DNA from: Octopus bimaculoides
Lineage: Eukaryota
Assembly (NCBI RefSeq): GCF_001194135.2
Contig: NC_068987.1
Location: forward strand, 59,130,318-59,189,060
Reading direction: 5' to 3'
DNA length: 58,743 nucleotides
Part shown: piece after piece, positions 14,882 to 52,904 of the stretch
Numbering within the stretch: the stretch's first letter is position 1
Layout: every line of letters begins with the position of its first letter
Notes under the pieces: generated by a model
The model's input: the letters and a program-made list of their open reading frames with translations, nothing else
What the model was told of the DNA's origin: nothing
The model's database searches: none
Translations under genes and position numbers: made by a program

Positions 14882-15763
14882 TGTTTTTTTCTTTTTCTTT
14901 CTTCAAATTTTCCATTTCTCGCCGAATGTTTTTCGTACACATAGGGCAGAGAAGCTCATTGTAAGCATTCCCAGTTTACACACACAAATTCACAGGTAAA
15001 ATATGTATTAAAATAAAATAAATAAATTCATGAATGGATGTTGTATTCACATCGATAATGCTCTTCTCAGTACATGAGTCGTTCCAGTTAGCACGATTTT
15101 TTGCACTTCCTGTAGGGATGGTAAGCCTGGTATCATTTTCAAATAGGTTTCAGTGCCCTTTTTTTTTTTTTATCATTCCTAGAGATCCTACAAACACTGG
15201 TATGGTAGTCGCCTTGAGGTGCCACATTTTTTCAATTTCTATCAGCAAGTCTTTATATTTACTGATCTTGTCAAATACTTTCGTCGCTATATTATGATCG
15301 CAGGGAATACTCATGTCAATTAATAAACACATCTTCTTTGTTTGATCTTTTATAATAATATCCGGTTTATTAGCCTTTATAGTTTTGTCGGTATGTACGG
15401 GGAAGTCCAAGAGAATCGACACATTTTCTCCCTCAGTCACAGCTTCAGGATGATGTTTATACCATTTGTCAGCGGTTTTGATTTTATAATGCCGACATAT
15501 TGTCCAATGTAAATACTGGTCGACTCTGTCATGTCTTGTTTTATATTCTACAGGTGCTAAGACTCTACACCCTGAGATTAGGTGGTCTATAGTTTCAATC
15601 TCATTGTTACAGAATCGGCATTTTGGGTCAGCTCCATTTTTTATCACATTGGCTTGGTAGTTCCGGGTTAATAAGCTTTGGTCTTGAGCAGCTAATATGA
15701 AACCTTCACTCTCTGCTTTTAGCCCTGAGCTTCGTAACCATTGATACGTGTGTTTCTGGTTGA

Positions 15764-15764
<1 letters not shown>
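14882..15764 (-). mobile_element. 5'-truncated R4/Dong-clade non-LTR retrotransposon (CCHC zinc knuckle plus restriction-like endonuclease) inserted in (TAA)n
   Basis: The frame carries CRFC..ETIDHLISGC, RHD, and KPDIIIKD..LLIDMSIP (PD..D). A 1-nt slip in the 13-A run (15159-15171) hides the native C-terminus GTETYLKMIPGLPSLQEVQKIVLTGTTHVLRRALSM* (stop 15047-15049). (AAT)n lies on both flanks. Confidence 0.85.
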
Positions 15765-15836
<72 letters not shown>

Positions 15837-15840
<4 letters not shown>

Positions 15841-15911
15841 TCACTGCCTGGAATCGAACTCGGAATCTTGGGGTTAGTAGCCCGCGCTCTTAACCACAAC
15901 GCCATATGCCC
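15837..15911 (-). mobile_element. tRNA-derived SINE head followed by (AAT)n
   Basis: The - strand reads GGGCATATGGCGTTGTGGTTAAGAGCGCGGGCTACTAACCCCAAGATTCCGAGTTCGATTCCAGGC, with an A-box-like TGGCGTTGTGG, a B-box GAGTTCGATTCC and an anticodon-like arm. Confidence 0.75.
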
Positions 15912-26105: not shown

Positions 26106-26220
26106 ATGCGACGCTTGAACATTGTTAATAGGAAGCAAACTTTAAAAGTTGTTAAAGAACTTGATGCTTTCCCCAAAGTTCCTGAGAATTACAAGGAAAC
26201 CAGTGCCACTGGTGGTGGAG
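26106..26220 (+). CDS. ERGIC2: ERGIC2 coding exon 1 (MRRLNIVNRKQTLKVVKELDAFPKVPENYKETSATGGG), 115 nt, ends phase 1
   Basis: Translation matches the recalled ERGIC2/Erv41-family N-terminus (human MRRLNRKKTLSLVKELDAFPKVPESYVETSASGG). Donor GTATGT at 26221. An upstream acceptor TTCCTTTCAAG ends at 26072, so the exon probably starts at 26073 with 33 nt of 5' UTR. Confidence 0.96.
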
Positions 26221-26240
26221 GTATGTATATTATTTTTCTT

Positions 26241-26750
26241 CATGATTGGGGTCCACTACATTTAGATGGCAAATATACTACACGATAGTGTGTTGTTAGC
26301 CAGCAGGAGGAGATATCTTCCTGGGGCTATAAACAACAGTAGCATCGTCCCTTATGGGTCCGCCACATTTAGGTGGCAAATATACTTCACGATTCTGTGC
26401 TGCTACTGTTTACGTCTTGCTCAGAGATTTATTATTGCTTATTTCTCCATTTTCGAGATCAGCAACAGTTTATCACTGGAAAAAGCAAATGGTATTTTGC
26501 ACTTTGAATGAGTTCTTATCGCTAGCTGGTGATTGTCACAAGCTGATGACGAGTTACTACCCAGAAACCTGGATCTGTGTGTATCATGTAAGGCTAGAGA
26601 TGGGAACAATGATTTCCCTTTGCAAATACTAATCGGATACAGACAGTGTGTTGTTTGCCAGCTGGAGGTGTTCTCTTCCTGGGGCTGTAAACAACGGTAG
26701 CATCGTCCCCTATGGTCTGCCACATTTAGGTGGCAAATATACTTCACGAT
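26241..26750 (+). mobile_element. Diverged retrozyme-family array (one full 357-bp unit plus two partial units) with a degenerate HHR at 26529-26587
   Basis: GGCAAATATACT(T/A)CACGAT ends at 26286, 26393 and 26750. The sequence aligns by eye to the reverse complement of the 44.3-kb unit. CTGATGA at 26543-26549, GAAAC at 26564-26568, ATC at 26573-26575. Confidence 0.78.
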
Positions 26751-29700
26751 CAGGCTCCAGTCTGATTTGGCAGGCTCCAATCTGAAACTCTGCCAAATCA
26801 GATTGGAGCCTGGTGTAGCCATCTAGTTTCACCAGTCAAATCGTCCAACCCATGCTAGCATGGAAAGCAGACGTTAAACGATGACGATGATGATGATGAT
26901 ATATATATAGAGGAATGTAGGTATACACATTATATATATGATGGACTCTCCTGTTGAATTCAACGTATGAGTGTTCAGCCTTTGCTGAACGACCTGCACA
27001 AATGATTTGTTTATAGAGATCAAATGTATGTGTTGAACAAGCTCACTATCCCCATCAAATTGATATTGACTGAACAGGTGCATGGTGTAACACGCTTCAA
27101 GAGTTGATGTGATTGTAGAGCAATGTGAGATGAAGAGCTTTGCTCAAGAACACAATGCACCACCCAGTGTACGAATTGAAACTGTGATCTCACAATCATG
27201 AGTGCAACGCCCTAACCACTAGACCATGCACCCTCATATATATATTAACCTTTAGCATTTAAACTAGCCATATCTGGCTCAAATATTCTACCTGTTTTAT
27301 ATTAAAACTACCCAGATTCAGACTCTCACACCTACCCTATAATGTCATTCTAAAAATAAACTATCACATCAAAATCTTGCTGCTGCAAGATAAAGCATAA
27401 TTAATTTAAAACATTGTGAATAAATAAGCATTACAATTGATAGAGTAAATTGAATGCTGAAGGGTTAAAGTATATTAAAGTTGAAATTTCACATTTAACA
27501 TTGATCTGAAAGATTGTTTAGTGTTTTGGTTACATATATAGAAGTACATCTCAGAACATTAGAATATTATACAAAAATTGGATATATTTGTTGTTAGTTT
27601 AGTCAACATATTAAAATTTCAATTGGTAGTAGACTCAATAAATCTAAACTAATCTATTCTTCGATATAAGCTAATAATGGCTTCCACACAGGTGTCCAAA
27701 TATCTCAAAATCATCATCATTTAGCGTCTGCTTTCCATGCTGGCATGGGTTAGACAGTTTGACTGTAACTGGTAAACTGGAGAGCTGCATCAGATTCCAG
27801 TCTGATTTGGCATAGTTTCTTTAGCTGGATGCCCTTCCTAACACCAACCACTTGAAGAGTACAATGGATGCGTTTTACATACTACTAGCATGGGTGCCAG
27901 TTACATAGCAACGGCACCTGCCACAACTATGATTTCACTTGGCTTGATGAGTCTTCTCAAGCACGGCTTATTGCCAAAGGTCTTACTCGATATCTTCACA
28001 TCCAAAACATATCATTACAATGGAGCAAGTGGGTCAACATTTGAGAGAAAGGTATGAAATTCCATATAGAACTTGATTGGAGCTCTGACTACCTGAGAAC
28101 ATTATGGCATAGAGAAAACCAAGCAATTCAGGTGTGATGGAAGTCAAAGTGGTCTAGATATCAGCCTTCAGCTCTGTCTGATTGTTGAGATACAACGCTA
28201 ATAAAACAGGTAGACTATTTGGGCCAGATATGACCAGTTTAATTGGTAAAATGGTTAAGTATATTATGTATAGTAATTATCATCTTTATTATATATATTA
28301 ACTGCCATTAACTATTCATCCAACTACAATTTTATAGTTACTGACTACTCTCTTTACTAAGTATAGTAACTGCTGTCTTTTATTACTAAGTCTATTTACT
28401 GATATGAAATGCTCACCCTATTATAACTAATGCTGGTTTTAATAAGCAGCTGTTGTTTTTATTAAATATATATTAACTACCACCTCAAAGACAAAAAAGT
28501 ATGTAACCGTAGTTATAGTTACTGCTGTCTTTATGATTTAACTACTGCTATAAAGACAGCAGGTTCCCAGCCATAGTTAGTGCTGTTTTTAGTAAATATA
28601 TTATGGACAACATCTGTTATGCATAAGAATAAATAGTTTTATTGAATATACACATTTCTTCAAAATTTTAATCTTCTAAGACATTGTTGGAAACACAGTT
28701 GCATTAACATCATTATGTATTTGATTACAATTTTGCAGAGGATATATTCTGGTTAATTTTGGGTAAATTTGGAGTTAGGTGATTCAAATTAACCTAATTT
28801 CATAACCAGTGCATTTATCTAATAAACTAGCTCAGGGTGAATGTTACGAGTCATTGGATGATAGAGACACCATTGGAAGGACTGATCAAGTGATACTTTG
28901 ATTGCAGATCTTTACTGCACGCTAACTAAATCTTTGTTATATAGAGCCTTTACTGTCTACAGCATTCATATACATTTGTCCCATAATGCCTAATTAAGAG
29001 CTTGATAGAAAAGGTTTTGATTGAAACTAAGATCTGGCAATCTGGGATACTCTCAGTAAGGCCAACTGTAATCCTTAATAAAATAGTTCCATTACATTTT
29101 AGATATGGAATTACCTAGGAGGGTAAAACAACTTCTTTGCATGTTTTCCATTTGTATCACAGTTTTTAGAATAAGTACACACTCTTGCAAACTTACCCAC
29201 CTGCTCTTCCTGATCCTCTGTCCATTTTCCCTCTTATATTCACCTTCTTGTATCTTGAGGGTAACCCTGTCACCTGGTCACCACCACCTTTTTCTCTCCT
29301 TCCACCTGGAATAGTCATGTACCTTTTCTATGGTAAGATACCTGTTCCTGCCCATCTATCATACATTAGTCTCTGAACACCTGGCATAAAGTCTCCTTCC
29401 TTTCTACTACACAATCCACTCAGTTGGGAGGTGGGGACTTGTCTTGCAAGTTACTTGGTGGCCTCACTCATACCAATTCTGCAAAAAGAGTATCCAGTAC
29501 ATACTGTAAAGTGGTTAGCATTAGGGAGGACATCCAGCTGTAGAAACCATGCCCAAGCAGACATTGGAGCTTGATATTGCCCTTTGGTTTGACAATATTG
29601 ATATATGCAATATTGTGAAACCATCCAGCCCATTCCAGTGTGGAATATGGATGTTAATTGATGACAATGACACTATCTCTGTATGATTACTAAAAGAGTA

Positions 29701-30519: not shown

Positions 30520-32900
30520 AGTGCATATTTTTTTTTTTTTTGCTGGGTCTGGAGGAAGGGGCAGTGTCTATGACCTTTGCAGACTCACCAAGTCTGGTAA
30601 GATTGATGCCATTAATATTTTTTCTAAACTGTTGCAACTTGCTACCTCCTAGAAAGAGATGAACAGAGGTGATTCCAGAGGGGTGACATTCCGGGCATGT
30701 AGGATGGGAATTGTAGTTAGTGCAGGGTATGTGAGATTGGACACACAGGAGTGACAAGAGGTGGAGAGACAGGTGGGGAAGGTATATGACTAACCAGTTT
30801 CAAGGAACAGAAGCCATTGTAGTGGCAATAAAAAAGCCAGAAAGAGGCTGAAACAGATCTGTGTGAGATTTAAGACACTTTCAACAGATTAACATTAGCA
30901 GCATCAGTAGCACGGTCTCAGATGTGGAAACATACCCTATTGCAGACTTCATTTGCGTACTTGTAAGTACTGGTGCCATGTAAAAAGCACCCAATACACT
31001 CTGTGAAGTGGTTGGCACTAGGAAGGGCATCCAGCTATAGAAACCATGCCAAAATAGACAGGGAGCCTGAACAGCCCTTCAGTCAGTCAGCTCCTGTTAG
31101 CTACAACCCATGCCAGATGGATAACGGATGTTAAATGATGATGATGATGATTTGAGCTTTGTAGAGTGTCAATTGTTGGAGGCTGAAATAGTTTCTGACC
31201 CTGAAGAGAAGAGGCAGTCTTTGGGATGTAGTCCTAGCTGTGCTACTGATGTGTTTTTTTATCAGCTAAGATTCTCAGTAATAGTGAGGCTTAGCATTTG
31301 AAGTGATTGCGAGGGCACTAGACAAGTGCTATTCATGTTTAGGCAGGATTTGGTACAATTGCTTTATTGATATGACTGGATTCTTTTGCTGTTAAAAGTG
31401 ACAAGATTGGCATCATCTGCATAACAATCGTATTATTGGATATAGCAGCAAATAGGCCATTGATGAATAGAAGGAAGAGAGTGGAAGACAAAACTGAATC
31501 CTGTGGTACACCACAGTTGATGGAGAGTTGAGCAGAAAAAGCTCTATCAACACGTCACAATTGTGCAGCCTGATAGCAATCTACCAGTGCAAAATGTGAG
31601 AGATGGTTGAAGCCCATAGGTAGAAAGATTTGATAAGAAATTCATGTGCCAGATGTGGTTCAAAGTTTTATTGATGTTTAAAGCACTAACGTTGCATTCA
31701 TCATGAAGGCCATCTAGTGAGTAGCATAAGAGAGTAGTTTCCAGTAGATCTGGCTCCGTGGAAGCTGGACTAGTGATCATTGAGCAGAGAGAGTGAGCCA
31801 GGTCCTGAAGAACATTGTTGTTAATGGGTTTTTCATTACCTTAGATATGTTAGAAGTGAGGGAAATGGGACAGTAGTTAACTAGGTCAGAGAAGTTTCCT
31901 TTCTTTGGAATGCGATGCACTGTAGTGTTTTCCCAAATGCTTAGAGTATATCCTCTTGAGAGTGGGAGATTAAAGAATCTGGTGAATATAGGAACAAGTT
32001 CAGGAGCACATTGTTTAAGTTTAATAAAAGGGACATTTCTAGGGGCAAAGGTCATGTTTGTTTCAAGCAAATGGAATTATTTCTGCACTTGGCATGTGTA
32101 TGTATGTGAGGTGGGGAGCCCATTAGAGTGAAAGGGGATAAATTTAGAGGAGATTGTCTGAGAGCGCATAGTATGAATTTAGATGTGAAATAGAACTGTA
32201 AAGGTGGATACTTTCTCACAAAGTGAAGCCATCATTTAGAAGATGAGGTAAAAAGAGACAGCAAAGTTGATGGAGATTTAAGGACTAGTTGGATCTGCTA
32301 TATTTTGGATGGTGGGAAAACTTGAGAGCTGTATGAAGGTATCCTTTCTGACTGAATAATAGTCTTATAAGAGTTGTGCTGCTGGATGATTGCCAACCAA
32401 TTTTGGAGAGTGGGTAGAATTCTTCAGGTATTATAGGCCTTGTTTTTTGCTATGAAAGCCACAGCACAGCTATAAGTGTGTAAGATGTGGAGGAACATGC
32501 CTTAACGTCACTTCTCTAGCAGATTATTTTAGTGCCAAGAGTGAAGTATGAGTGTTGCTTTCAGCGAAAATTGATATAAAACAGGCTGAACTCTGACCAG
32601 TCAGCTGAATTGAAGTGCCATAGGGTGCCATGTAGCATGTGATTTTGTGTTGGTTAGTTACAATTAGGCAATAGTTAGATGATCTGATAGATGCTGAGAT
32701 AGTTATAGGTTGGAAGAGGTTAGATTTTTGCAACAAGAAATAGGTCAAGTGTTTGGGATGTCTGTATGACAGTCTGGAATATGAGTAAGTGATGAAACAA
32801 GTTGGTTGAAAAAGTTGAGAATTGTAGTAACAGATAGATGAATAGAAAAAAATTCTCAAACAACCTTTATTGAACTGATAATGAATTTAGGAAAGGTGAC
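30520..32900 (-). mobile_element. Decayed CR1/L2-group LINE (APE remnant plus RT) in ERGIC2 intron 2, interrupted by an RTE-tail repeat at about 30960-31150
   Basis: The - strand gives LKQCAPEL..FN..W....V..IPKKG..DLVNYCPISLTS (ORF 31777-32070), NCGVPQDSVLS.TLFLLFIN, YADD (about 31412-31423) and a degenerate LWN..FK.NIN-like 3' end. Confidence 0.82.
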
Positions 32901-34645: not shown

Positions 34646-34890
34646 ATGTTACCCAGCATCTAATGTAACACAGAAGCATTATCAAACCTGTGAAGTATCT
34701 TCTGGAAGCCATCACCCTTACCATTCTCATTTCTCCCAATAAGATTTTCGTGGTCCATTTCTGCTTTGGTTTTGACCATTATTTCTTATATATTTGAACA
34801 ACGATTTTCTATCAATTATTCATTACTAACTAAACTTGATATTTTTTTTTCTAATTTTGTTTATGTTCTTTTTTCATTTTCACTCTCCAG

Positions 34891-34937
34891 CACTCTCCAA
34901 ATTAATGTTGATATTACAGTGGCAATGAAATGTCCAA
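34891..34937 (+). CDS. ERGIC2: ERGIC2 coding exon 3 (TLQINVDITVAMKCP), 47 nt
   Basis: Polypyrimidine tract and CTCTCCAG acceptor end at 34890; donor GTAAGT at 34938. INVDITVAMKC matches the conserved INIDITVAMKC motif; the frame is continuous. Confidence 0.96.
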
Positions 34938-36823: not shown

Positions 36824-37043
36824 CTGTTGGAGCTGATTGTTTAGATATCACTGGCCAAGATGTTCAAGCCTTTGGTCAGTTACAGCAAGATGATGCTTAC
36901 TTTGATCTCACTCCACAGCAACAACACTACCATAACACACTTCAAGAATTTAACCAATATTTAAGAGAAGATTACCATGCTATCCAGGAAGTTTTGTGGC
37001 TCACATCTGGGATATCATCTCTTGCTGCTAACATGCCAGATCC
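36824..37043 (+). CDS. ERGIC2: ERGIC2 coding exon 4 (TVGADCLDITGQDVQAFG...DLTPQQ...AIQEVLW...NMPDP), 220 nt
   Basis: Acceptor TTTTCTAG ends 36823; donor GTATGT at 37044. The frame is open; VGAD.LD and FDLTPQQ match ERGIC2 (VGADVLD, FDLSPQQ). Confidence 0.94.
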
Positions 37044-39120: not shown

Positions 39121-39216
39121 TGGGCTTAAACGTGATGGACCACCTGATGCCTGCCGAATTCATGGTTCACTACATGTCAACCGGGTTGCAGGCAATTTTC
39201 ATATTACAGCTGGGAA
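39121..39216 (+). CDS. ERGIC2: ERGIC2 coding exon 5 (GLKRDGPPDACRIHGSLHVNRVAGNFHITAGK), 96 nt
   Basis: Acceptor TTGCAG ends 39120; donor GTAAGT at 39217. ACRIHG.L.VN.VAGNFHIT.G is the hallmark ERGIC/Erv46 lumenal motif. Confidence 0.97.
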
Positions 39217-39530
39217 GTAAGTTAATTTATTACTTTTCATTCATATTATCTCATTCTCTGTCTTTCTCTCTCTTATATTTATATATTCATTCATTTGTAA
39301 TATATACATAGTAATATTATTTACATGACAACAAAATAAGCACAGATTGTAAAACATCTACATTGGCACTACCAAAGGAATGTTCACAGGCACACAACAA
39401 CACATGCATACATTCTGGAATGCAAAGTGAAGAAAGTGTCCCTGTCTCAATGTGTCTGGTAAAGCACAACCACAAGATGGGAAATAATAAACTATGCACT
39501 ATCTTTCACAGTGGTTCTGGACTCTTGACT

Positions 39531-40410
39531 CATCATCGTCATTGTTTAATGTCCACTTTCTATGCTGGCTTGGGTCGGACGGTTTGACTGAGGGCTGGCT
39601 GGCCAGAAGGCTGCACCAGGCTCCAATCTGATCTGGCAGAGTTTCTACAGCTGGATGCCCTTCTTAATGCCAACCACTCTGAGAGTGTAGTGGATGCTTT
39701 TTATGTGCCACTGGCATGAGGGCCAGTCAGGTGGTACATGGCATCGACCACACTTGAATGGTGCTTTTTACTTGCCATCCACATGGGAGCCAGTCAGCTG
39801 GCACTGGCATCGACCACGCTCAAATGGTGCTTTTACGTGCCAATCGGGCAGTACTGTCATGGGCTACGACAACAATTTCACTTGCCTCAACAGGTCTTCG
39901 CAAGCGCAGTTTATTGCCCAATGATTGAAGGGTACTCTTAAATGGCTGGTTGGGCTGCACTGGCATAAGCCACAGTTGTGATCTCACTTGGCTTGCTGGG
40001 TCTTCTCAAGCATATCTCCAAAGGTCTCGGTCATTTGTCATCGCCTCAGTGAGGCCCAACGTTTGAAGGTCATGCTTCACCACCTCATCCCAGGTCTTCC
40101 TGGGTCTACCACAGGACCCCCCTACTGCTAGGGTGTGACACTTTTTTACGCAGCTGTCCTCATCCATATGCAACACATGACTATACCAGCGCAGTCGTCT
40201 CTCTTGCACACCACATCTGATGATTCTTAAGTCCAACTTTTCTCTCATGACTTTTACACTCTGTCGTGTATGCACACTGATATTACACATCCAGTAGAGT
40301 ATACTGGCTTCATTCCTTGCAAGCTTACACATGTCCTCAGCAGTCATGGCCCATGTTTCATTGCCATGTAGCGTGGCTGTTTGCACACATGCGTCATATA
40401 GTCTACCTTT
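39531..40410 (-). mobile_element. RTE-clade LINE 3' fragment with (GAT)n tail
   Basis: ORF 40006-40386: LHGNETW, ERRLRWYSHV, GRPRKTWDEVVKHDL, DRDLWR. The 3' UTR is shared with many short copies in the window. Confidence 0.88.
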
Positions 40411-41888: not shown

Positions 41889-42860
41889 TATATACGGAAG
41901 AACTGCAGCATTCTTGTCTAAATATATCTGGGAGTTAAAAGTGAACAATATAACTGCAGCCACAAGGTGGGAAATAACAGATGGTGCCACTTGAAAAGTA
42001 CCCACTCCACACTGTAAAGTGGTTTGCATTTGGAATGGCATCCAGCTGTAAAAACCATGCCAAAACTTACCTCTCTTGTGCGAGTGCCATGTAAAAAGCA
42101 TTCAGCCCACTCTACGGAGTGGTTCGTGTTTAGGACGAGCGTCCAGCCATAAAAACCATGCCAAAATAGACACAGAAGCATGGTGCAGGCTCCTGCCTCG
42201 CCAGCTCCTGTCAAACCGTCCAACCCATGCTAGCATGGAAAGAGGACGTTAAACAATAATGATGATGATGATGATGCACCTCATAAATGCATGGTCTAAT
42301 GTCAATATGAAAGCTAAGCTACACTTCTATATAATTACTCAAAAGTTTAGTTGCACTTCTGTCTACCTCATATACCACATTACTTGCAAACTTTCTAATG
42401 CATTATACATAGGTAAAACTATGACAATCACTATCTCTCCTGCACATGCTGAACTTTAGCACTCTCAATCAACCTTTTTTGTAGACACCCAAAAGACTAT
42501 TTTCATTATTCTCATTCAAGTACTCAAACTAAACCTTCTCACCTATGTACAGTGATTCAATATTGTCACTTGTGCACCTACTTGTCAATATAAAATTTTC
42601 ACTATTCTCCACAACTATTTACTATTCTCATTTGTGTACTTTGACCTCATGCAATTATTTTTCACTATTTCTACATGCATATATACTAAACTTTGTCCAA
42701 CACAAAAAGTACTTTTATTTTTTTGTCCTTGTATGTATTCAGTACTTTCTAAACCCCCCAGTTAAAAGATCTTTGTCAGTCTCAAACAAAGAAGCTGGTT
42801 TTGAAATGTGACAATCCTCTTCTTACAGCACAACAGCTTACAAATGTATTCAGAGCAGAT

Positions 42861-43262
42861 GTTGTCGTTGTTGTTGTTGTTGTTGGCACTCCGTCGCTTA
42901 TGACATCGAGGGTTCCAGTTGATCTGATCAATGGAACAGCCTGCTCGTGAAATTAACGTGCAAGTGGCTGAGCACTCCACAGACACGTGTACCCTTAACG
43001 TAGTTCTCGGGGATATTCAGCGTGACACAGTGTGACAAGGCTGACCCTTTGAATTACAGGCACAACAGAAACAGGAAGTAAGAGTGAGAGAAAGTTGTGG
43101 TGGAAGAGTACAGCAGGGTTTGCCACCATCCTCTGCCAGAGCCTCGTGGAGCTTTAGGTGTTTTCGCTGAATAAACATTAACAACGCCCAGTCTGGGAAT
43201 TGAAACCGCGATCCTATGACCGCAAGTCCGCTGCCCTAACCACTGGGCCATTGCGCCTCCAC
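42861..43262 (-). mobile_element. Same SINE family, 13-bp TSD ATTCAGAGCAGAT
   Basis: Near-identical to 34263-34645 in reverse; TSD at 42848-42860 and 43263-43275. Confidence 0.9.
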
Positions 43263-43973: not shown

Positions 43974-44503
43974 ATAACTTGCCTGATGACCTCGAGAATG
44001 CACAGACAAAACTCAATTGTAGTAAGAGACTGACTTGACCAAGCTAAACATTCTTTTCTACTCTGGGCACAAGGCCTGAAATTTTGGGGGAGGGGGCCAG
44101 TCAATTAGATCAACCCTAGTACACAACTGGTACTTAATTTATCGACGCCTGAAAGGATGAAAGACAAAGTCAACCTCGGCGGAATTTGAACTCGGAACAT
44201 AAAGCATTTTGCCTGGCTTGCTAACATTTCTGCCAGCTCACTGCCTTACAAAGTATCAATATATTAACCTCTAATCTGGTAGGGAGTACTCTTCCTTTGG
44301 AATGTTAACACTAAAAGTATATATATATAAATATATATATATATAAAGTGAAGTATATTTGCCACTTAAATGTGGCTGACCCCGGGGGGTGGATGTTACT
44401 GTTGCTTTTAGCCCCAGGAGGACATCTCCTCCAGCTGGCTATCGACACACATTTGTGTCCTGTCTGTATATGCCAAGGGAAGTTATCTTTCCCATCTTGA
44501 TCT

Positions 44504-44562
44504 ACGATACGTACGTACTCGAGTTTCAGGGTTATTTCCCTTCTTCAGCGTACGACAATCGC
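44504..44562 (-). ncRNA. Type I hammerhead ribozyme, retrozyme unit 1
   Basis: The - strand reads GCGAU-UGU-CGUACG CUGAAGA AGGG-AAAUAA-CCCU GAAA C-UCGA-G UA CGUACG-U-AUCGU. The catalytic core is complete, stem II is 4 perfect bp, stem III has a palindromic UCGA loop, the triplet is GUA, and stem I is 6 bp plus a 5-bp distal helix. Confidence 0.9.
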
Positions 44563-44854
44563 CGACCTTCGATTCAAAAGATAATTCTTGGCAAATATAT
44601 ATAACTTTTTCCAGTGAAATTATTCACTGATATCGAAAAAGTGAAAACAAGCAATGTTAAATTTCTGAACGAGGTATTAACAGTAACTGCACAATAAAGT
44701 GAAGTATATTTGCCACTTAAATGTGGCTGACCCCGAGTGGTGGATGTTACTGTTGCTTTTAGCCCCAGGAGGACATCTCCTCCAGCTGGCTATCGACACA
44801 CATCTGTGTCCCATCTGTATTTGCCAAGGGAAGTTATCTTTCCCATCTTGATCT

Positions 44855-44913
44855 ACGATACGTACGTACTCAAGTTTCAGGGTTATTTCCCTTCTTCAGC
44901 GTACGACAATCAC
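44855..44913 (-). ncRNA. Type I hammerhead ribozyme, retrozyme unit 2
   Basis: Same motif exactly 351 bp downstream. It differs only by loop III UUGA instead of UCGA and a U.G wobble in distal stem I; the core is intact. Confidence 0.87.
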
Positions 44914-45610
44914 CGACCTTCGATGCAAAAGATAATTCTTGGCAAATATATATAANNNNNNNNNNNNNNNNNNNNNNNNNNNNNNNNNNNNNNNNNNNNN
45001 NNNNNNNNNNNNNNNNNNNNNNNNNNNNNNNNNNNNNNNNNNNNNNNNNNNNNNNNNNNNNNNNNNNNNNNNNNNNNNNNNNNNNNNNNNNNNNNNNNNN
45101 NNNNNNNNNNNNNNNNNNNNNNNNNNNNNNNNNNNNNNNNNNNNNNNNNNNNNNNNNNNNNNNNNNNNNNNNNNNNNNNNNNNNNNNNNNNNNNNNNNNN
45201 NNNNNNNNNNNNNNNNNNNNNNNNNNNNNNNNNNNNNNNNNNNNNNNNNNNNNNNNNNNNNNNNNNNNNNNNNNNNNNNNNNNNNNNNNNNNNNNNNNNN
45301 NNNNNNNNNNNNNNNNNNNNNNNNNNNNNNNNNNNNNNNNNNNNNNNNNNNNNNNNNNNNNNNNNNNNNNNNNNNNNNNNNNNNNNNNNNNNNNNNNNNN
45401 NNNNNNNNNNNNNNNNNNNNNNNNNNNNNNNNNNNNNNNNNNNNNNNNNNNNNNNNNNNNNNNNNNNNNNNNNNNNNNNNNNNNNNNNNNNNNNNNNNNN
45501 NNNNNNNNNNNNNNNNNNNNNNNNNNNNNNNNNNNNNNNNNNNNNNNNNNNNNNNNNNNNNNNNNNNNNNNNNNNNNNNNNNNNNNNNNNNNNNNNNNNN
45601 NNNNNNNNNN

Positions 45611-45659
<49 letters not shown>

Positions 45660-45885: not shown

Positions 45886-46810
45886 TTTAACGTCCACTTT
45901 TCATGCTGACATTGGTTAGATGGTTTGAACGAAACTGGTAAGCTGGAGAGGTGCACCAGGTTCCAATCTGATTTGACATGGTTTCTACGGCTGAATGTCC
46001 TTCCTAATGCCAACCACTCCGAGAGTGTAGTGGGTGCTTTTTATATGCCACTGGCACAGGTACCATTTACATTATACTGGCAACAGCCACATCTACGATT
46101 TCACAAGTACCATTTACATGACATTGACAATGGTCACAACTATGATTTCACTTTGCTTGACAAGTCTTCTTAACTACAGCATATCGCCAAGGTCTTGGTC
46201 ACTTGCCATCACCTCATCACCTCCATGAGACTCAACATTTGAAGATCATGGTACCAGCAATGGCCACAATTACAATTTCATGGGTGCTATTTACATGACA
46301 CCAGCAAAGGCCATGACTTCAATTTTACTTGGCTTGATGGGTCTTCTCAAGCACAGCATATCACCAAAGGTCTCTGTCACTAGTCATCACCTCCGTGAGG
46401 TCCATTTGAAGATCATGCTTCACCACCTTGTCCCATGTTTTTCTGAGTCTACCTCTTCCACAGTTAGAGATCGGCACTTCTTTACACAGCTGTCCTCATC
46501 TATTTGCTTCACATGACTATACCAGTGCATTCGTCTCTCTTGCACACTACATTTGATGCCTCTTATGCCCAGTTTTTCTCTCAAGACACTTATGCTCTGT
46601 CACTCCTGCACACTGACATTGCACATCCAACAAAGCATACTAGTTTCATTTCTTTGAAGCTTTTGCATGTCCTCTGCAGTCACAGGCCATGTTTCTCTGC
46701 CATGGAGCATGGCTGTTCGCACACAGGTAGCAAACAGTCTACATTTCATTCTGAAGGAGGGGCTCTTTGTTACTAACAGAGGCAGAAACTCTCTGAACTT
46801 TGCCCAGCCT
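45886..46810 (-). mobile_element. RTE-clade LINE 3' fragment (decayed)
   Basis: Homologous by eye to 39531-40410 (e.g. ACACAGCTGTCCTCATC, GTCTCTCTTGCACAC). Confidence 0.78.
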
Positions 46811-47805: not shown

Positions 47806-47844
<39 letters not shown>

Positions 47845-50800
47845 NNNNNNNNNNNNNNNNNNNNNNNNNNNNNNNNNNNNNNNNNNNNNNNNNNNNNNNN
47901 NNNNNNNNNNNNNNNNNNNNNNNNNNNNNNNNNNNNNNNNNNNNNNNNNNNNNNNNNNNNNNNNNNNNNNNNNNNNNNNNNNNNNNNNNNNNNNNNNNNN
48001 NNNNNNNNNNNNNNNNNNNNNNNNNNNNNNNNNNNNNNNNNNNNNNNNNNNNNNNNNNNNNNNNNNNNNNNNNNNNNNNNNNNNNNNNNNNNNNNNNNNN
48101 NNNNNNNNNNNNNNNNNNNNNNNNNNNNNNNNNNNNNNNNNNNNNNNNNNNNNNNNNNNNNNNNNNNNNNNNNNNNNNNNNNNNNNNNNNNNNNNNNATA
48201 TATATCATCATCATCGTTTAACGTCCGTTTTCCATGCTAGCATGGGTTGGACGATTTGACTGAGGTCTGGTGAAACCGGATGGCTACACCAGGCTCCAAT
48301 CTGATTTGGCAGAGTTTCTACAGTTGGATGCCCTTCCTAACGCCAACCACTCTGAGAGTGTAGTGGGTGCTTTTATGTGCCACCTGCATGAGGCCAGTCA
48401 GGCGGTACTGGCAACGATCACGTTCAAATGGTGTATTTTATGTGCCACCAGCACAAGAGCCAGTCCAGGGGCACTGGCAATGATCTTGCTCGAAAGTCCA
48501 TTACACATGCCACGTGCACAAGTGCCAGAAAGGCGATGCTGGGCACAGGTGCCATCCCGATTTCGCTATATATATATATGATGGACTCTCCTGTCATTAA
48601 ACGCCAGAAAGGTTTTGACAACTTCTTACCGAACAAGCACACAGTTGATTCGTTTATAGTCATCAAATGTTTATGTAGACATAAGCTCACTCCCTTCATC
48701 AGATTGATATTACCTGTACAGGTGCAACGGGTGCCACATGTCAGATGTCGAAATGATTGCAGAGCAACATGAAATGAAGTGCTTTGCTCAAGAGCTCAAC
48801 ACAACGCAACACATGGTCTGGGAATCAAACCTGTTTGTCATTTATTCAGTATATCTTCTGCTTTTAAAAAGTCATGTCCTCACATATTTTCCAGGGTCTC
48901 ATTTTGATAGAGAAAACCTTATTCTACTGTAGACACTGTACTTACAACTGTTAGTAACAGCTAAAAATTGCGTTACCTTTATATTTCTTAATTTCCCTGT
49001 ACACCCTGATGTATAACCCACCATGTTCCCAAACTGTTCTGCCATTTGTTTAAATCATTATTCTCAAAGATAGAAAGTTAACTGTTTTTGAGGGGTGATG
49101 GGGATATTGCTAATACCTAAATATTTTGCCTAGTTCACTTTTTACATTTATTGTTGAATTATCTGCTTATATTCACCTCCATGTAACTTGAGGATACAAC
49201 CCCAACATATCTTCTAATGCATCTTCTCTCCCTTCCAAATGGGGTTGCCATGTATCACTTCTACAGCAAAACATTTGTTTTTGTCCCTCTAGCATACCTT
49301 AACTTCTCATCACCTGACACAAAACTACCTTCCTTAATACTACTCGCCTTCTCAATTAAGGGGTCTCAACTTGCAAGTTACTTGGTGACTTCGCTGGTGC
49401 TACATGAAAAAGCACCCAGTACACTGTGTAAAGTGTTCAGCATTAGAAAGGGCATCCAACTGTAGAAACCATGCCAAATCAGACAGTAGAAGCTCAGTGC
49501 AGTTTTCTGGCTCACCAGTTCCTGTGAAACTGTCCAGTCCATGTCAGCATGAAACACACATTAAATAGTGAGGATGATGGTGTTAAAAGTTGTCATAAAT
49601 TCAGAGAACTTGGATTTCTTAATTTTTATCAAGATCTTCAAAAACTTTGCTTACATTGTAGCAGGTACTTTACCATTCCTCAAATTCACACTGTAAGATG
49701 TCTGGCTTGTTACCTTTCTGCACTTGAGCATTATATGTTTTTGGTGACACTATTTAACAATCAAGAACCATAATAGTTCATTTAATTTCTTCTGTATGCT
49801 TTACTAGGTGTACAAATTCAATTTAAGTGCGAGTTCAGATTAACTTTCCTAAACTGTGCTTCAATAAGAGCAAATTATACTGTAAAGAGGTTGGCATTTG
49901 GAAGGGCATCCAACTATAAAAACCTTGCCAATATCAACCTCTCCTGTGCTTGTGCCATGCAGAAAGCATTCTGTCAACAGTCCACTTTGCTGGGTGGTTG
50001 GTGTTTGTAAGGGCATCCAGCCATAACAACCATGCCAAAACAGACACAAAAGTATGGTACAGGTTCATGCCTGGCCAGTTCCAGTCAAACCAAATAACTC
50101 ATGCCAGCATGGAAAGTGGATGTTAAACAATGATGATGATGATAAATGACTCTTAAGATGTTTCTCTGCCCTTTATACTTTACTCTTTCTGCATTGAGTC
50201 TTGAAGCATGACAGATCACTTAACCAAAATGTTTCCAAGTAACTTTTAAAAGATTGCTTTTACAGTTTGGCAAGATGAAGCAGCCTAAATCACATTGGAA
50301 ATATGCTCAATGTCCATCAGTTGATTATGAAGAACTGCTGCCCCTGCTATTAACTCATTTTGATTCTTTAGAGACTTATAAGGCACCTAATTTATCAGAA
50401 AATATCTGAAGATAATTTGAACCTACAACTCTGTTTACAGTATCACTGCATTAATTTCAAGCCAGTGGTTAACACAGTGGCATACTAAAAAATAAAAAAT
50501 AGTTTTGTGGCCCTCATTTTCATCCTAACATTATTTGATGCTCCATCAAGGGTAAAGACCCACTTTGGTCATGAATGAGCATGAGATACACCTAGAAAGT
50601 TCCCCTCTGAGGCACAAGTCTGGGCAAGATTGTTTATGGAAGACCAGCAGTTGCCCATTCATACCAGCCTCCCCTCTCCATGCCACTGATGTCATCCAAG
50701 GTAAAAGCAAAGGCCGACACAGCTTGGCACCAGTAACATCACAACTCATTTCTGTAGCTGAATGAACTGGAGCTACATGATCTAAAGTGTCTTGTTCGAA

Positions 50801-52845: not shown

Positions 52846-52904
52846 GTCCATACCAGTAATACCACGAGGTCATGCTCATTTAGCTCTTCTTGTTGGCGAG
52901 AATG
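52846..52904 (+). CDS. ERGIC2: ERGIC2 coding exon 6 (SIPVIPRGHAHLALLVGEN), 59 nt; the gene continues past the window
   Basis: Acceptor TCTTGCAG ends 52845; donor GTTTGT at 52905. PRGHAHL matches ERGIC2 (AIPHPRGHAHLAALV). Phase 2 in matches exon 5. The expected next exon (YNFSHRI-like) was not found before 58743. Confidence 0.92.

What the first reader, a model, noticed from the sequence alone, without database searches (positions are those of the whole stretch)
44344..44955. Retrozyme-like system: 351-bp tandem repeat with two well-formed type I hammerhead ribozymes, antisense in an ERGIC2 intron
Seen: two head-to-tail units with period 351 run into a gap of about 650 N. Each has on the - strand CUGAAGA, stem II AGGG/CCCU, GAAA, stem III with a 4-nt loop, GUA, and stem I CGUACG/CGUACG extended past a UGU/U internal loop by GCGAU/AUCGU. 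The unit is otherwise rich in hairpins (GCCAC-TTAAAT-GTGGC; GGAGGA-CAT-CTCCTCC; CAAGGGAAG-TTAT-CTTTCCCATCTTG; TTGCCAAG pairing with CTTGGCAA). Established: metazoan non-LTR retrozymes are tandem repeats of a few hundred nt with type I HHRs; their multimeric transcripts self-cleave to monomers that circularise. Inference: cleavage at 44867/44866 and 44516/44515 would release a 351-nt non-coding monomer (44516-44866, - strand). I know of no characterised cephalopod family of this kind but cannot verify novelty.
Basis: partly seen in the sequence, partly recalled or inferred. Interest (0 to 1): 0.92.

Follow-up and report, generated by a model that had tools for sequence, protein, structure and literature searches.

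The report
Hammerhead-ribozyme tandem repeat (retrozyme-like element)
A 351-bp non-coding repeat sitting backwards in an intron carries a complete self-cleaving hammerhead ribozyme motif in each unit and belongs to a family of about a thousand copies, so it is a new, probably cephalopod, example of the already described animal "retrozyme" mobile elements, not a new kind of system.

Summary
Two copies (44343-44604 and 44694-44955, 97% identical, period 351) run into a 655-N gap. On the minus strand each carries every invariant hammerhead (HHR) core nucleotide in type I topology. Helix I has 6 bp, a UGU/U internal loop and 5 more bp; helix II has 4 bp and a 6-nt loop; helix III has 2 bp and a palindromic tetraloop; the cut follows GUA. 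My descriptor finds only these two sites, against 0.013 expected per window.

The unit is non-coding, 40.5% G+C, and folds far better than shuffles (z about -5.9) with its ends juxtaposed. Genomic reads show roughly 1,000 copies with the canonical core. Position 17 is C, A or U but under 1% G. Sister subfamilies keep helix I through different sequence, and three related species carry the motif.

It sits antisense in an ERGIC2-like intron and abuts an (AT)n microsatellite.

Against: Rfam reports no hammerhead at any threshold, 10.1-11.1 is A-U not G-C, RNA-seq signal is weak and unstranded, and no read ends pile up at the cut site. Cleavage and circles are therefore inferred.

Verdict: a new member of a known kind, the metazoan non-LTR retrozymes linked to Penelope-like elements. 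Interest is moderate.

The parts
44343..44955 (-). Visible part of the tandem array: about 1.75 units of a 351-bp repeat. The ribozyme sense strand is the minus strand. The array continues into the assembly gap.
   Evidence: Two copies at 97% identity, spacing 351; sequence; 9 differences between copies.
44504..44562 (-). Hammerhead ribozyme 1, type I. Distal helix I GCGAU/AUCGU, internal loop UGU/U, proximal helix I CGUACG/CGUACG, core CUGAAGA (44548-44542), helix II AGGG/CCCU with loop AAAUAA, GAA (44527-44525), helix III A-C[UCGA]G-U, A17 at 44516. Predicted cut between 44516 and 44515.
   Evidence: descriptor hit, 0.013 expected per window; structure consistent with the hammerhead fold, -14.1 kcal/mol.
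44855..44913 (-). Hammerhead ribozyme 2. Same as ribozyme 1 except loop III UUGA and one U-G pair in distal helix I. A17 at 44867. Predicted cut between 44867 and 44866.
44516..44866 (-). Predicted 351-nt monomer released by cleavage at both ribozymes. Non-coding, 40.5% G+C. In the fold, the 5' and 3' ends are brought together by helix I and further long-range pairings.
   Evidence: MFE -110.2 linear, -107.5 circular; z -5.8 and -5.9 against 200 dinucleotide shuffles; 58-60% paired; no ATG-started reading frame longer than 45 codons, read round the circle.
44318..44343 (.). Interrupted (TA)n microsatellite directly abutting the 3' end (minus-strand sense) of the array. Probable insertion target.
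   Evidence: (AT)n runs of 8 or more repeats make up only 0.5% of the window. Other family copies also abut AT-rich microsatellites (joint 44343->44517 with AAGGCG between, (ATT)n).
44956..45610 (.). Assembly gap (655 N) hiding the rest of the array and its other boundary.
45611..45649 (.). (AT)n microsatellite directly after the gap. Possibly the other half of the target microsatellite, but gaps in this window often abut microsatellites.
26249..26762 (+). Second, older array of the same superfamily, with the ribozyme sense strand on the + strand. Period about 357, about 78% identical to the unit. It holds a decayed hammerhead (CUGAUGA at 26543-26549, GAAA at 26564-26567) whose helices I and II are broken, mostly by CpG-type changes. 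It lies just downstream of the first ERGIC2-like exon.
39121..39217 (+). Upstream flanking exon of the host ERGIC2-like gene. The 3' end of the exon is approximate.
   Evidence: tblastn of recalled human ERGIC2 residues 167-191; splice joint 37043->39121, GT..AG.
52862..52894 (+). Next detectable ERGIC2-like coding piece downstream (weak match, E 0.15). It places the array inside an intron.
   Evidence: colinear with the four stronger matches.

Best explanation
The locus is a short tandem array of a non-autonomous, non-coding mobile repeat of the metazoan 'non-LTR retrozyme' type. It is inserted into an (AT)n microsatellite, antisense in an intron of an ERGIC2-like gene.

Shown:
- Each 351-bp unit encodes a complete canonical metazoan type I hammerhead ribozyme on the minus strand.
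- The unit belongs to a subfamily of roughly 1,000 copies with that intact core, inside a superfamily of tens of thousands of copies. The superfamily is present in at least three related species.
- The monomer is strongly self-paired, with its ends juxtaposed.

Inferred:
1. A multimeric minus-strand transcript is cut after GUA at 44867/44866 and 44516/44515. Helix III is only 2 bp, and its 8-nt core (ACUCGAGU) is a perfect palindrome. The two ribozymes of a tandem transcript therefore probably pair to form a double hammerhead, as in newt and axolotl repeats.
2. The released 351-nt RNA carries a 5'-OH and a 2',3'-cyclic phosphate. Helix I holds the ends together, and a host RtcB-type ligase circularises the RNA.
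3. Copies are made by the reverse transcriptase of an autonomous element, most likely a Penelope-like element, and are inserted as partial tandems at AT-rich microsatellites.

This particular copy is probably a passenger in the intron, with no role for the host gene.
For: Motif:
- All invariant core positions are present: C3 U4 G5 A6 G8 A9 G12 A13 A14 A15.1 U16.1 H17.
- Topology is type I, with helix I of 6 bp plus an internal loop plus 5 bp, helix II of 4 bp with a 6-nt loop, and helix III of 2 bp with a palindromic tetraloop.
- This is the architecture described for canonical metazoan hammerheads and for invertebrate retrozymes.
- Chance expectation is 0.013 per window.

Family, from raw genomic reads:
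- Depth is about 900 over the ribozyme flanks at roughly 0.7x sampling.
- Reads with the canonical U4 number about 880, matching that depth.
- Position 17 is C in 60%, A in 39%, U in 1% and G in under 1% of reads, which fits the H17 rule. C17 is at 92-100% in organisms B, H and G.
- 44504 U>C turns a G-U pair into G-C in 58% of copies.
- Both differences between the two local ribozymes fit the structure.

Covariation between subfamilies (loose ends):
- One sister family has distal helix I GUGGC/GCUAC instead of GCGAU/AUCGU, with the internal loop at the same place.
- Positions 2.4-1.4 are U-A here and A-U (CGAACG/CGUUCG) in the abundant family.

Helix III:
- Every helix III variant is an 8-nt palindrome. 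Self-duplex energies are -5.8 to -10.9 kcal/mol.

Ancestry:
- The older copy at 26249-26762 has CUGAUGA, so the canonical core is ancestral in the superfamily.

Unit properties:
- 351 bp, 40.5% G+C, no ORF, z about -5.9, ends paired. These fit the published class: 150-450 bp, below 45-50% G+C, highly self-paired.

Mobility:
- The array abuts (TA)n, and two other loci of the family abut AT-rich microsatellites.
- Penelope-like elements show insertion bias for microsatellites and form partial tandems (PMC8557442).
- Retrozymes are argued to derive from the terminal repeats of these elements (preprint 10.64898/2026.07.22.740005).

RNA:
- RNA-derived contigs identical to the ribozyme region exist in several runs of organism A.
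Against: - Rfam release 15 gives no hammerhead match at gathering score, nor at E<=10 on 761-nt or 81-nt stretches.
- The 10.1-11.1 pair is A-U instead of the usual G-C (my knowledge). This may lower the cleavage rate.
- The conserved loop-loop contact nucleotides were not evaluated.
- The nearest-neighbour MFE of the isolated domain (-20.7 kcal/mol) is not the hammerhead fold (-14.1 kcal/mol).
- Expression is weak. In the one raw RNA-seq run, depth is about 35 over the ribozyme for about 1,000 genomic copies.
- That run is unstranded, so no strand can be assigned. Exon reads of the host gene lie on both strands.
- No excess of read ends is seen at the predicted cut site.
- The RNA-seq contig runs may contain DNA.
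- Within-family divergence is low and dominated by CpG decay. An intact core in about 1,000 copies therefore shows recent amplification from an intact master rather than selection on each copy.
- The commonest relative, with about 10,000 copies, carries U4->C in the core. A canonical ribozyme is therefore apparently not needed for amplification.
- No reverse transcriptase of a Penelope-like element was found in the window.
- Only 1.75 units are visible, and whether most family members are tandem could not be determined.
Confidence: 0.74

Rival explanations
1. The repeat is a fragment of a Penelope-like element itself: a solo or partial pseudo-LTR whose hammerhead belongs to the autonomous element. 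It is not a separate non-autonomous retrozyme family.
For: - Hammerheads sit in the flanking repeats of Penelope-like elements, which insert as partial tandems and favour microsatellites.
- Retrozyme consensus sequences in frogs match the termini of these elements.
- The abundant sister family has the palindromic helix III (AUCCGGAU) typical of ribozymes associated with these elements.
- The gap hides 655 bp.
Against: - No reverse transcriptase or GIY-YIG ORF lies next to the array on either side of the gap. The only RT-like ORFs in the window look like LINE remnants and lie 4-29 kb away.
- A 655-bp gap cannot hold a 3-4 kb element.
- The ribozyme has the canonical architecture (helix I 6 bp, helix II 4 bp). 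It does not have the 'minimal' architecture reported for metazoan Penelope-like elements, with helix II 6-8 bp, helix I 4-5 bp and no or 1-bp helix III.
- The unit repeats with a period of 351 bp.
Confidence: 0.12
2. The repeat is an inert satellite or SINE-like repeat. The hammerhead is an inherited relic that no longer cleaves, or cleaves negligibly, in vivo. The family spreads, or spread, without any need for self-cleavage or circular RNA.
For: - The most successful relative (about 10,000 copies) has U4->C and N7->C in the core.
- A-U at 10.1-11.1 and a 2-bp helix III.
- There is no Rfam match.
- RNA depth per copy is below the intronic background of the host gene, and no read ends pile up at the cut site.
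- Older copies decay freely.
- The large Naiad clade of Penelope-like elements amplifies without canonical hammerheads.
Against: - About 1,000 copies keep every core nucleotide.
- Position 17 avoids G although A, C and U all occur.
- Helix I is kept through different sequences in sister families, and helix III stays palindromic in four variants.
- The motif persists in at least three other species.
- The available RNA libraries are not suited to small non-polyadenylated circles, so absence of signal is weak evidence.
Confidence: 0.12
3. The motif is a chance resemblance or an assembly artefact: a collapsed or duplicated read next to a gap.
For: - The array borders a gap in a fragmented draft; the window has 14 gaps.
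- Tandem Repeats Finder and Rfam report nothing.
Against: - The descriptor expectation is 0.013 per window.
- The two copies differ at 9 positions, so they are not a duplicated read.
- The same sequence is found in many independent DNA and RNA runs of four organisms.
Confidence: 0.02

Closest known systems
Non-LTR retrozymes of invertebrates, e.g. the 350-390-bp repeats of the mussel Mytilus galloprovincialis and the 220-240-bp repeats of the coral Acropora millepora (Cervera and de la Pena 2020, PMC7229834)
   Same: - Type I hammerhead in every unit of a short tandem repeat, with a unit size of 351 bp.
- Low G+C, no ORF, no LTR.
- Thousands of genomic copies.
- Strongly self-paired monomer.
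- Helix III of 2 bp capped by a tetraloop, described there as typical of invertebrate ribozymes.
- Mollusc host.
   Different: - No sequence similarity was tested or expected, because the families are species-specific.
- Abundant linear and circular RNAs were shown for those families but not here.
- The pair at 10.1-11.1 here is A-U.
- Here the canonical subfamily is a minority inside a much larger superfamily whose main lineage has a mutated core.
Newt satellite 2 and axolotl Rtz_331/Rtz_353 repeats with dimer-dependent hammerheads (Forster et al. 1988; PMC7229834)
   Same: - Repeat of about 330-350 bp.
- Type I hammerhead with a weak helix III and a palindromic loop, so that two ribozymes of a tandem transcript can form an extended helix III.
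- Here ACUCGAGU self-pairs at -10.7 kcal/mol.
   Different: - Vertebrate hosts and unrelated sequence.
- Dimer dependence is measured there and only inferred here.
Minimal hammerheads in the terminal repeats of Penelope-like elements (Cervera and de la Pena 2014, PMC4209133)
   Same: - Type I topology and a palindromic helix III.
- Partial-tandem insertions and association with microsatellite targets.
- The sister family seen in the reads (AUCCGGAU helix III) resembles these.
   Different: - The ribozyme here has the canonical helix I and helix II sizes, with an internal loop in helix I.
- No reverse transcriptase ORF is attached.
- The period is 351 bp rather than about 3 kb.
Schistosoma Sm-alpha SINE-like repeats with type I hammerheads (Ferbeyre et al. 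1998, cited)
   Same: - High-copy short non-coding repeat of an invertebrate with a type I hammerhead.
- Helix I has an internal loop placed to contact loop II.
   Different: - Sm-alpha has a stable helix III and cleaves efficiently as a monomer.
- It has a SINE-like organisation with a Pol III promoter, which was not found here; no tRNA-like part was detected.
Plant LTR retrozymes (Cervera et al. 2016, PMC4918200)
   Same: Non-autonomous retroelement whose RNA is excised by two hammerheads and circularised.
   Different: - Plant elements have type III ribozymes inside LTRs, a PBS and PPT, units of 600-1000 nt, G+C above 55%, and Gypsy-type mobilisation.
- None of these applies here.

Membership tests
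Hammerhead ribozyme, type I | Invariant core nucleotides C3 U4 G5 A6 N7 G8 A9, G12 A13 A14, A15.1-U16.1, H17 (not G) | tested here: met
   Both copies read CUGAAGA ... GAA A ... U A. In the family, position 17 is C, A or U, and G is below 1%.
Hammerhead ribozyme, type I | Three helices around the core, with helix I open-ended (type I) | tested here: met
   Helix I 6 bp, internal loop UGU/U, then 5 bp. Helix II 4 bp closed by a 6-nt loop. Helix III 2 bp closed by a 4-nt loop.
Hammerhead ribozyme, type I | Canonical metazoan architecture: helix I 6 bp, helix II 4 bp, helix III 1-2 bp with a small palindromic loop (PMC4209133) | tested here: met
   Loop III is UCGA, and the 8-mer ACUCGAGU is palindromic.
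Hammerhead ribozyme, type I | G10.1-C11.1 pair at the base of helix II (usual in natural hammerheads; from my own knowledge) | tested here: not met
   A10.1-U11.1 in both copies. No variant at these positions reaches 1% of all reads laid on the core in organism A. That depth is dominated by the abundant relative (family M), so variants below about 9% of the canonical subfamily would not be seen.
Hammerhead ribozyme, type I | Match to the Rfam covariance models of the hammerhead clan (Hammerhead_1, RF00163, and relatives) | tested here: not met
   No match at gathering score on the whole window. No match at E<=10 on 761 nt, on 81 nt, or on the second locus.
Hammerhead ribozyme, type I | Support for the helices from covariation among relatives | tested here: inconclusive
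   Sister subfamilies seen in read overhangs keep distal helix I with different sequence (GUGGC/GCUAC vs GCGAU/AUCGU). They also swap 2.4-1.4 from U-A to A-U. In addition, G-U changes to G-C at 44504 and C-G to U-G at 44561. Linkage of the paired changes within single molecules could not be read from the summary tables.
Hammerhead ribozyme, type I | Conserved loop I - loop II tertiary contacts | not tested
   The internal loop (UGU/U) lies 6 bp from the core and faces a 6-nt loop II on a 4-bp helix II, which is the right geometry. The specific contact nucleotides were not compared. Mussel retrozyme ribozymes also lack most of them.
Hammerhead ribozyme, type I | Site-specific self-cleavage giving 5'-OH and 2',3'-cyclic phosphate | not testable with these tools
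   The only indirect test was negative or uninformative: no excess of RNA read ends at 44516/44515 at a depth of about 35.
Metazoan non-LTR retrozyme (Cervera and de la Pena 2020) | Short tandem repeat (150-450 bp, dimer to multimer) with a type I hammerhead in each unit | tested here: met
   Period 351. Two complete ribozymes are visible, and the array continues into the gap. A second array with period about 357 lies at 26249-26762.
Metazoan non-LTR retrozyme (Cervera and de la Pena 2020) | Low G+C (below 45-50%), no ORF, no LTR, PBS or PPT | tested here: met
   G+C is 40.5%. The longest ATG-started frame is 45 codons, read round the circle. No terminal repeats other than the unit itself. PBS and PPT were not searched for specifically.
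Metazoan non-LTR retrozyme (Cervera and de la Pena 2020) | Multi-copy, dispersed family in the genome | tested here: met
   Read depth is about 900 over the ribozyme flanks at about 0.7x sampling, and about 31,000 at the superfamily peak. Contig depth is 300-9,000 times single copy. There is a second locus in the window.
Metazoan non-LTR retrozyme (Cervera and de la Pena 2020) | Monomer RNA highly self-paired, ends brought together | tested here: met
   MFE -110.2 (linear) and -107.5 (circular) kcal/mol, z -5.8 and -5.9, 58-60% paired. The 5' end pairs with the 3'-proximal strand of helix I.
Metazoan non-LTR retrozyme (Cervera and de la Pena 2020) | Abundant expression as linear and circular RNA of unit length | tested here: inconclusive
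   RNA-run contigs identical to the ribozyme exist. The raw RNA run shows low depth, is unstranded, and has no informative junction or end signal. Junction reads cannot separate circles from tandem DNA templates.
Metazoan non-LTR retrozyme (Cervera and de la Pena 2020) | Coexistence with autonomous Penelope-like elements in the same genome | not tested
   No such ORF was found in the window, and the genome could not be searched. The literature reports these elements in cephalopods.
Penelope-like element (pseudo-LTR with minimal hammerhead) | Ribozyme lies in direct repeats flanking an ORF with reverse transcriptase and GIY-YIG endonuclease | tested here: not met
   No such ORF lies beside the array. 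The gap is only 655 bp.
Penelope-like element (pseudo-LTR with minimal hammerhead) | Minimal ribozyme architecture: long helix II (6-8 bp), short helix I (4-5 bp), no or 1-bp helix III | tested here: not met
   Helix II is 4 bp, helix I is 6+5 bp, helix III is 2 bp plus a tetraloop.

The most novel reading that the evidence does not exclude
The superfamily may be a natural experiment on whether hammerhead catalysis is needed for retrozyme spread. The lineage with the canonical core has about 1,000 copies. A sister lineage of about 10,000 copies carries U4->C and N7->C in the core plus a fully palindromic helix III (AUCCGGAU).

There are two readings. Either CCGACGA is an unrecognised active natural core variant that works only as a dimer, or amplification by the helper reverse transcriptase does not require self-cleavage at all. 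Either outcome would revise the circular-RNA model of animal retrozyme transposition.

A weaker version is that cephalopods express these repeats as abundant small circular RNAs that ordinary poly(A) RNA-seq has missed.
Probability: 0.15. Interest if true: 0.65.

Novelty: new member of a known kind. Interest (0 to 1): 0.4.

Why it matters
It extends the animal retrozyme class (tandem repeats with type I hammerheads) to what appears to be a cephalopod. It also supplies a concrete 351-nt candidate circular RNA with defined cut sites that can be tested directly.

The family context adds something beyond another example:
- A canonical-core subfamily and a ten-fold larger core-mutant sister lineage sit in the same genome. 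This offers a direct comparison of ribozyme competence against copy-number success.
- Repeated association with AT-rich microsatellites supports the proposed link between retrozymes and Penelope-like elements.

For genome annotation, the case shows that Rfam's hammerhead models miss this family entirely. Counts of hammerheads in cephalopod genomes, such as the 235 loci reported for the giant squid, may therefore be large underestimates.

Tried and rejected
- **Rfam, whole window at gathering score:** nothing matched.
- **Rfam at E<=10 on 761 nt, on 81 nt, and on the second locus:** only chance-level snoRNA and sRNA matches, no hammerhead.
- **Tandem Repeats Finder:** does not report the array.
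- **ARAGORN:** no tRNA-like part, so no support for a tRNA-derived SINE.
- **Pfam on eight ORFs:** only a sub-threshold zf-RVT match at 15150-15905. There was no domain of a Penelope-like element and no ERGIC domain for the single exon.
- **The search for homologous proteins with the exon at 36826-37038:** one unnamed 66-aa hit. Its contig (L001) comes from a distant species, with the exon 75% identical, and holds no copy of the unit. No orthologous empty site could be examined.
- **Strand of transcription:** the raw RNA run is unstranded, so the 2:1 mate bias over the ribozyme means nothing.
- **Read ends at the cut site:** none above the tool's threshold.
- **Copy number from contig word depth:** this overestimates and hides variants near contig ends. 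I preferred the raw reads.
- **The 'skips 83' joints 44440->44524 and 44791->44875:** I first read these as deletion variants lacking the cut site. The overhang consensus shows they are the abundant sister family, whose middle part is too diverged to align.
- **Alternative cleavage register at 44512/44863:** this arises from the CGUACGUACG repeat. I rejected it because it shortens helix I and opens helix III.
- **A CUGAUGA heptamer on the + strand of the sister family:** no helix II or GAAA follows it, so it is not a ribozyme.
- **Literature searches for a described cephalopod retrozyme:** none found in the held library. The search was poorly specific.
Full report
**1. What is in the sequence**

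The region 44343-44955 holds two direct copies of 262 nt, at 44343-44604 and 44694-44955. They are 97% identical with start-to-start spacing of 351. They differ at 9 positions. That makes about 1.75 units of a 351-bp head-to-tail repeat, which then runs into a gap of 655 N at 44956-45610.

Read on the minus strand, each unit contains:

5'-GGCGAU UGU CGUACG CUGAAGA AGGG AAAUAA CCCU GAA A C UCGA G U A ^ CGUACG U AUCGU-3'

In hammerhead numbering this gives:
- C3 U4 G5 A6 A7 G8 A9.
- Helix II of 4 bp (A10.1-U11.1, then three G-C pairs) closed by a 6-nt loop.
- G12 A13 A14.
- Helix III of A15.1-U16.1 and C15.2-G16.2, closed by UCGA.
- A17, the cleavage site.
- Helix I of 6 bp, followed by an internal loop (UGU opposite U) and 5 more pairs.

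The predicted cuts lie between 44516/44515 and 44867/44866, 351 nt apart.

The second copy differs inside the motif only in loop III (UUGA) and in one distal pair (C-G to U-G). Both changes fit the structure.

**2. Is it more than chance?**

I ran a type I hammerhead descriptor over both strands of the window. It requires CUGANGA, helix II of at least 3 bp, GAAA, at least one pair inside A15.1-U16.1, UH, and helix I of at least 4 bp. It finds these two sites and nothing else. In 300 composition-matched random sequences it gave 0.013 hits per window.

The two sites are one duplication, so independent evidence has to come from relatives (section 4).

Rfam does not help. No hammerhead family matches at gathering score on the window, or at E<=10 on 761-nt or 81-nt stretches. 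I report this as a failed membership criterion. It does not outweigh the direct reading of the core. It does mean that the motif departs from the Rfam seed sequences, probably through the A-U pair at 10.1-11.1, the 2-bp helix III and A7. That explanation is my inference.

**3. The unit as an RNA**

- The 351-nt minus-strand monomer (44866 down to 44516) has 40.5% G+C.
- It folds at -110.2 kcal/mol as a linear molecule and -107.5 as a circle. Shuffles average about -81 and -76 (z -5.8 and -5.9; none of 200 shuffles does as well). It is 58-60% paired.
- The 5' end produced by cleavage pairs with the 3'-proximal strand of helix I, and further long-range helices extend this closure.
- No reading frame started by ATG exceeds 45 codons, even when read round the circle.
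- The isolated ribozyme domain has an MFE (-20.7 kcal/mol) that is not the hammerhead fold (-14.1). This is common for this motif, because the core is not modelled by nearest-neighbour rules.
- The 8 nt forming helix III, ACUCGAGU, are a perfect palindrome with a self-duplex energy of -10.7 kcal/mol. The same holds for ACUUGAGU in copy 2 (-5.8), for the commonest family variant ACUCGGGU (-8.9), and for the sister family's AUCCGGAU (-10.9).

A weak helix III with a palindromic loop is the published signature of metazoan type I hammerheads. These become fully active when two ribozymes of a tandem transcript form a double hammerhead (PMC4209133; PMC7229834).

**4. The family**

Public runs of one organism (coded A) and of three others (B, G, H) hold the sequence.

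*Contig depth.* Single-copy flank has word depth 13.6 (X1), 52.7 (X2) and 39.6 (X14, organism B). The ribozyme part of the unit reaches 10^4 to 10^5.

*Raw genomic reads.* These give cleaner numbers. I read 1.93 Gb per run, which I take as roughly 0.7x on an assumed genome size of 2.4-2.7 Gb. The resulting depths are:

| Part of the unit | Read depth |
|---|---|
| Ribozyme flanks (44490-44521, 44558-44573) | 600-950 |
| 34-nt core | about 8,000 |
| Around 44388-44431 and its second copy | about 31,000 |

*Structure of the superfamily.* The 351-bp unit is one subfamily, of order 1,000 copies, of a very large superfamily.
- Of the core reads, 89% carry G at 44547 (U4->C on the ribozyme strand), usually with G at 44544 (N7->C).
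- In the looser lay, 72-91% of core reads also carry T at 44552.
- Their overhangs read, on the ribozyme strand...UCGAACG CCGACGA AGGG AAAUAA CCCU GAAA UCCGGA UA^C GUUCGUGCUG....
- The remaining 880 or so reads, with canonical U4, match the depth of this subfamily's own flanks.

*Variation within the canonical subfamily.*
- Position 17 is C in 60%, A in 39% and U in about 1% of reads, with G below the 1% listing threshold. It is C in 92-100% of depth in organisms B, H and G. That is the H17 rule, and the family consensus has the classical GUC.
- 44504 U>C (58%) converts the terminal G-U of distal helix I into G-C.
- Loop III varies (A>G in 54%).
- The other variants are at 1-5% and mostly at CpG sites.
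- No variant at any invariant core position reaches 1% of the total core depth. Because the sister family dominates that depth, variants below about 9% of the canonical subfamily would be invisible there.

*Between subfamilies.*
- One sister lineage replaces distal helix I GCGAU/AUCGU by GUGGC/GCUAC, with the internal loop in the same place.
- The abundant lineage replaces the 2.4-1.4 pair U-A by A-U (CGAACG/CGUUCG).
- I could not link the paired changes within single molecules, so I rate covariation as suggestive.

*An older relative in the window.* It lies at 26249-26762 on the + strand, with period about 357 and 78% identity. It aligns through the ribozyme and reads CUGAUGA ... GAAA, with helices I and II broken mainly by CpG-type changes. 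The canonical core is therefore ancestral in the superfamily, and individual old copies decay. This is what one expects of a mobile element whose ribozyme matters for the active master copies and not for the host.

**5. Genomic context**

A human ERGIC2 sequence that I wrote from memory aligns colinearly to the + strand at 26106-26237 (E 6e-12), 34886-34933, 36826-37038, 39143-39217 and 52862-52894. RNA reads give a GT..AG splice joint 37043->39121 on the + strand. The array therefore lies in an intron and the ribozyme strand is antisense to the gene. The host pre-mRNA carries only the complement.

On its left the array abuts an interrupted (TA)n run (44318-44343). Directly after the gap comes (AT)n (45611-45649). 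Runs of (AT) of 8 or more repeats make up 0.5% of the window.

Two other loci of the family, seen in reads, also adjoin AT-rich microsatellites:
- An expressed copy in organism A whose ribozyme-strand 3' end lies 6 nt past the cut site, next to (TA)n (joint 44343->44517 with AAGGCG between, 25 reads).
- A copy in organism G truncated at C3, next to (ATT)n.

Penelope-like elements are reported to prefer microsatellite targets and to insert as partial tandems. A 2026 preprint derives vertebrate retrozymes from their terminal repeats. No reverse transcriptase of that kind is in the window. The RT-like ORFs at 15150-15905, 31777-32070 and 40006-40386 look like LINE remnants.

**6. Expression**

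- Contigs of four RNA-seq runs of organism A cover the unit, some identical to this copy across the cut site.
- The one raw RNA run gives depth 20-60 over the ribozyme and 1-8 over the most subfamily-specific parts, from 6% of the run.
- In the same sample, host exons have depth about 25-60 and unique intron 0-3. Exon reads lie on both strands, so the library is unstranded.
- Per genomic copy the signal is below intronic background.
- There is no excess of read ends at 44516/44515.
- Such libraries would not capture small non-polyadenylated circles well, so this neither supports nor refutes the circular RNA model.

**7. Mechanism and comparison**

*Shown:*
- A complete canonical metazoan type I hammerhead in each unit of a 351-bp AT-rich non-coding tandem repeat.
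- A strongly self-paired monomer.
- Membership of a large, multi-species, dispersed family.
- Insertion next to microsatellites.

*Inferred:*
- Minus-strand multimeric transcription.
- Cleavage after GUA, probably as a double hammerhead.
- Circularisation by a host RtcB-type ligase.
- Copying by a reverse transcriptase of a Penelope-like element.

The closest known systems are the invertebrate non-LTR retrozymes (mussel, 350-390 bp; coral, 220-240 bp) and the amphibian satellite 2 and axolotl repeats.

All structural criteria of that class that I could test are met. The expression criterion is inconclusive. Coexistence with Penelope-like elements was not tested.

The locus is not part of a Penelope-like element as far as can be seen, and the ribozyme does not have the 'minimal' architecture of metazoan elements of that type.

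**8. Novelty and score**

Tandem type I hammerhead repeats are described as widespread in invertebrates including molluscs. Rfam hammerhead hits have been counted in a squid genome. I found no description of a cephalopod retrozyme family in the held library.

This is a new member of a known kind. Two things lift it above routine:
- Rfam's models miss the family completely.
- A ten-fold more abundant sister lineage has a U4->C core, which bears on whether self-cleavage is required for spread.

Interest is 0.4.

Noticed in passing
window 26249-26762 (+): A second, older array of the same superfamily (period about 357, about 78% identical), in the opposite orientation. It starts 12 bp after the first ERGIC2-like exon (26106-26237). 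Here the ribozyme sense strand is the host gene's sense strand. The hammerhead is decayed: CUGAUGA and GAAA are kept, helices I and II are broken. The array starts with a 38-nt 3'-terminal fragment joined to a 5'-truncated unit. It ends at the same unit position (…GGCAAATATACTTCAC) as the array at 44343.
   Followed up: partly
seen only in reads laid on window 44524-44557 and 44875-44908: An abundant sister family (about 10,000 copies by read depth) shares the ribozyme core but has U4->C and N7->C (CCGACGA), helix I CGAACG/CGUUCG and a fully palindromic helix III AUCCGGAU. It outnumbers the canonical-core subfamily about ten to one.
   Followed up: partly
window 44359-44440, 44608-44791: These parts of the unit have 10-30 times the read depth of the ribozyme flanks (up to about 31,000 against about 1,000). 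The unit is therefore one branch of a superfamily with tens of thousands of copies. Relatives differ by small indels, for example loss of the 12 nt TTTGCCACTTAA in about half of the reads.
   Followed up: partly
window 42848-43262: An extremely abundant SINE-like repeat (contig word depth 10^6 to 10^7) is present here. It is absent from the orthologous contig of organism B, which joins 42847 directly to 43263. This looks like a lineage-specific insertion.
   Followed up: no
window 44050-44250: Another very high-copy SINE-like repeat lies immediately upstream of the array (word depth about 10^6). Together with the microsatellites, this makes the neighbourhood almost entirely repetitive.
   Followed up: no
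window 44322-44343: Reads of the (TA)n microsatellite are about six times deeper in the RNA run (about 600) than in a DNA run read to the same number of bases (about 100). No other bin of this stretch shows this.
   Followed up: no
window 15150-15905 (-), 31777-32070 (-), 40006-40386 (-): These ORFs look like remnants of LINE-type reverse transcriptases. 15150-15905 gives a sub-threshold Pfam zf-RVT match (25.5 bits against a 27.5 cut-off); the other two resemble such proteins by eye only. None looks like a Penelope-like element.
   Followed up: partly
whole window: There are 14 assembly gaps (3,709 N in total). Several directly abut microsatellites, for example 47808-47844 (AT)n before the gap at 47845-48197. 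The (AT)n after the gap at 45611 is therefore weaker evidence for the target site than the (TA)n directly touching the array at 44343.
   Followed up: partly
window 46055-46151: A 47-bp tandem repeat (2.1 copies, 80% matches) lies 400 bp beyond the gap. It is unrelated to the 351-bp unit.
   Followed up: no
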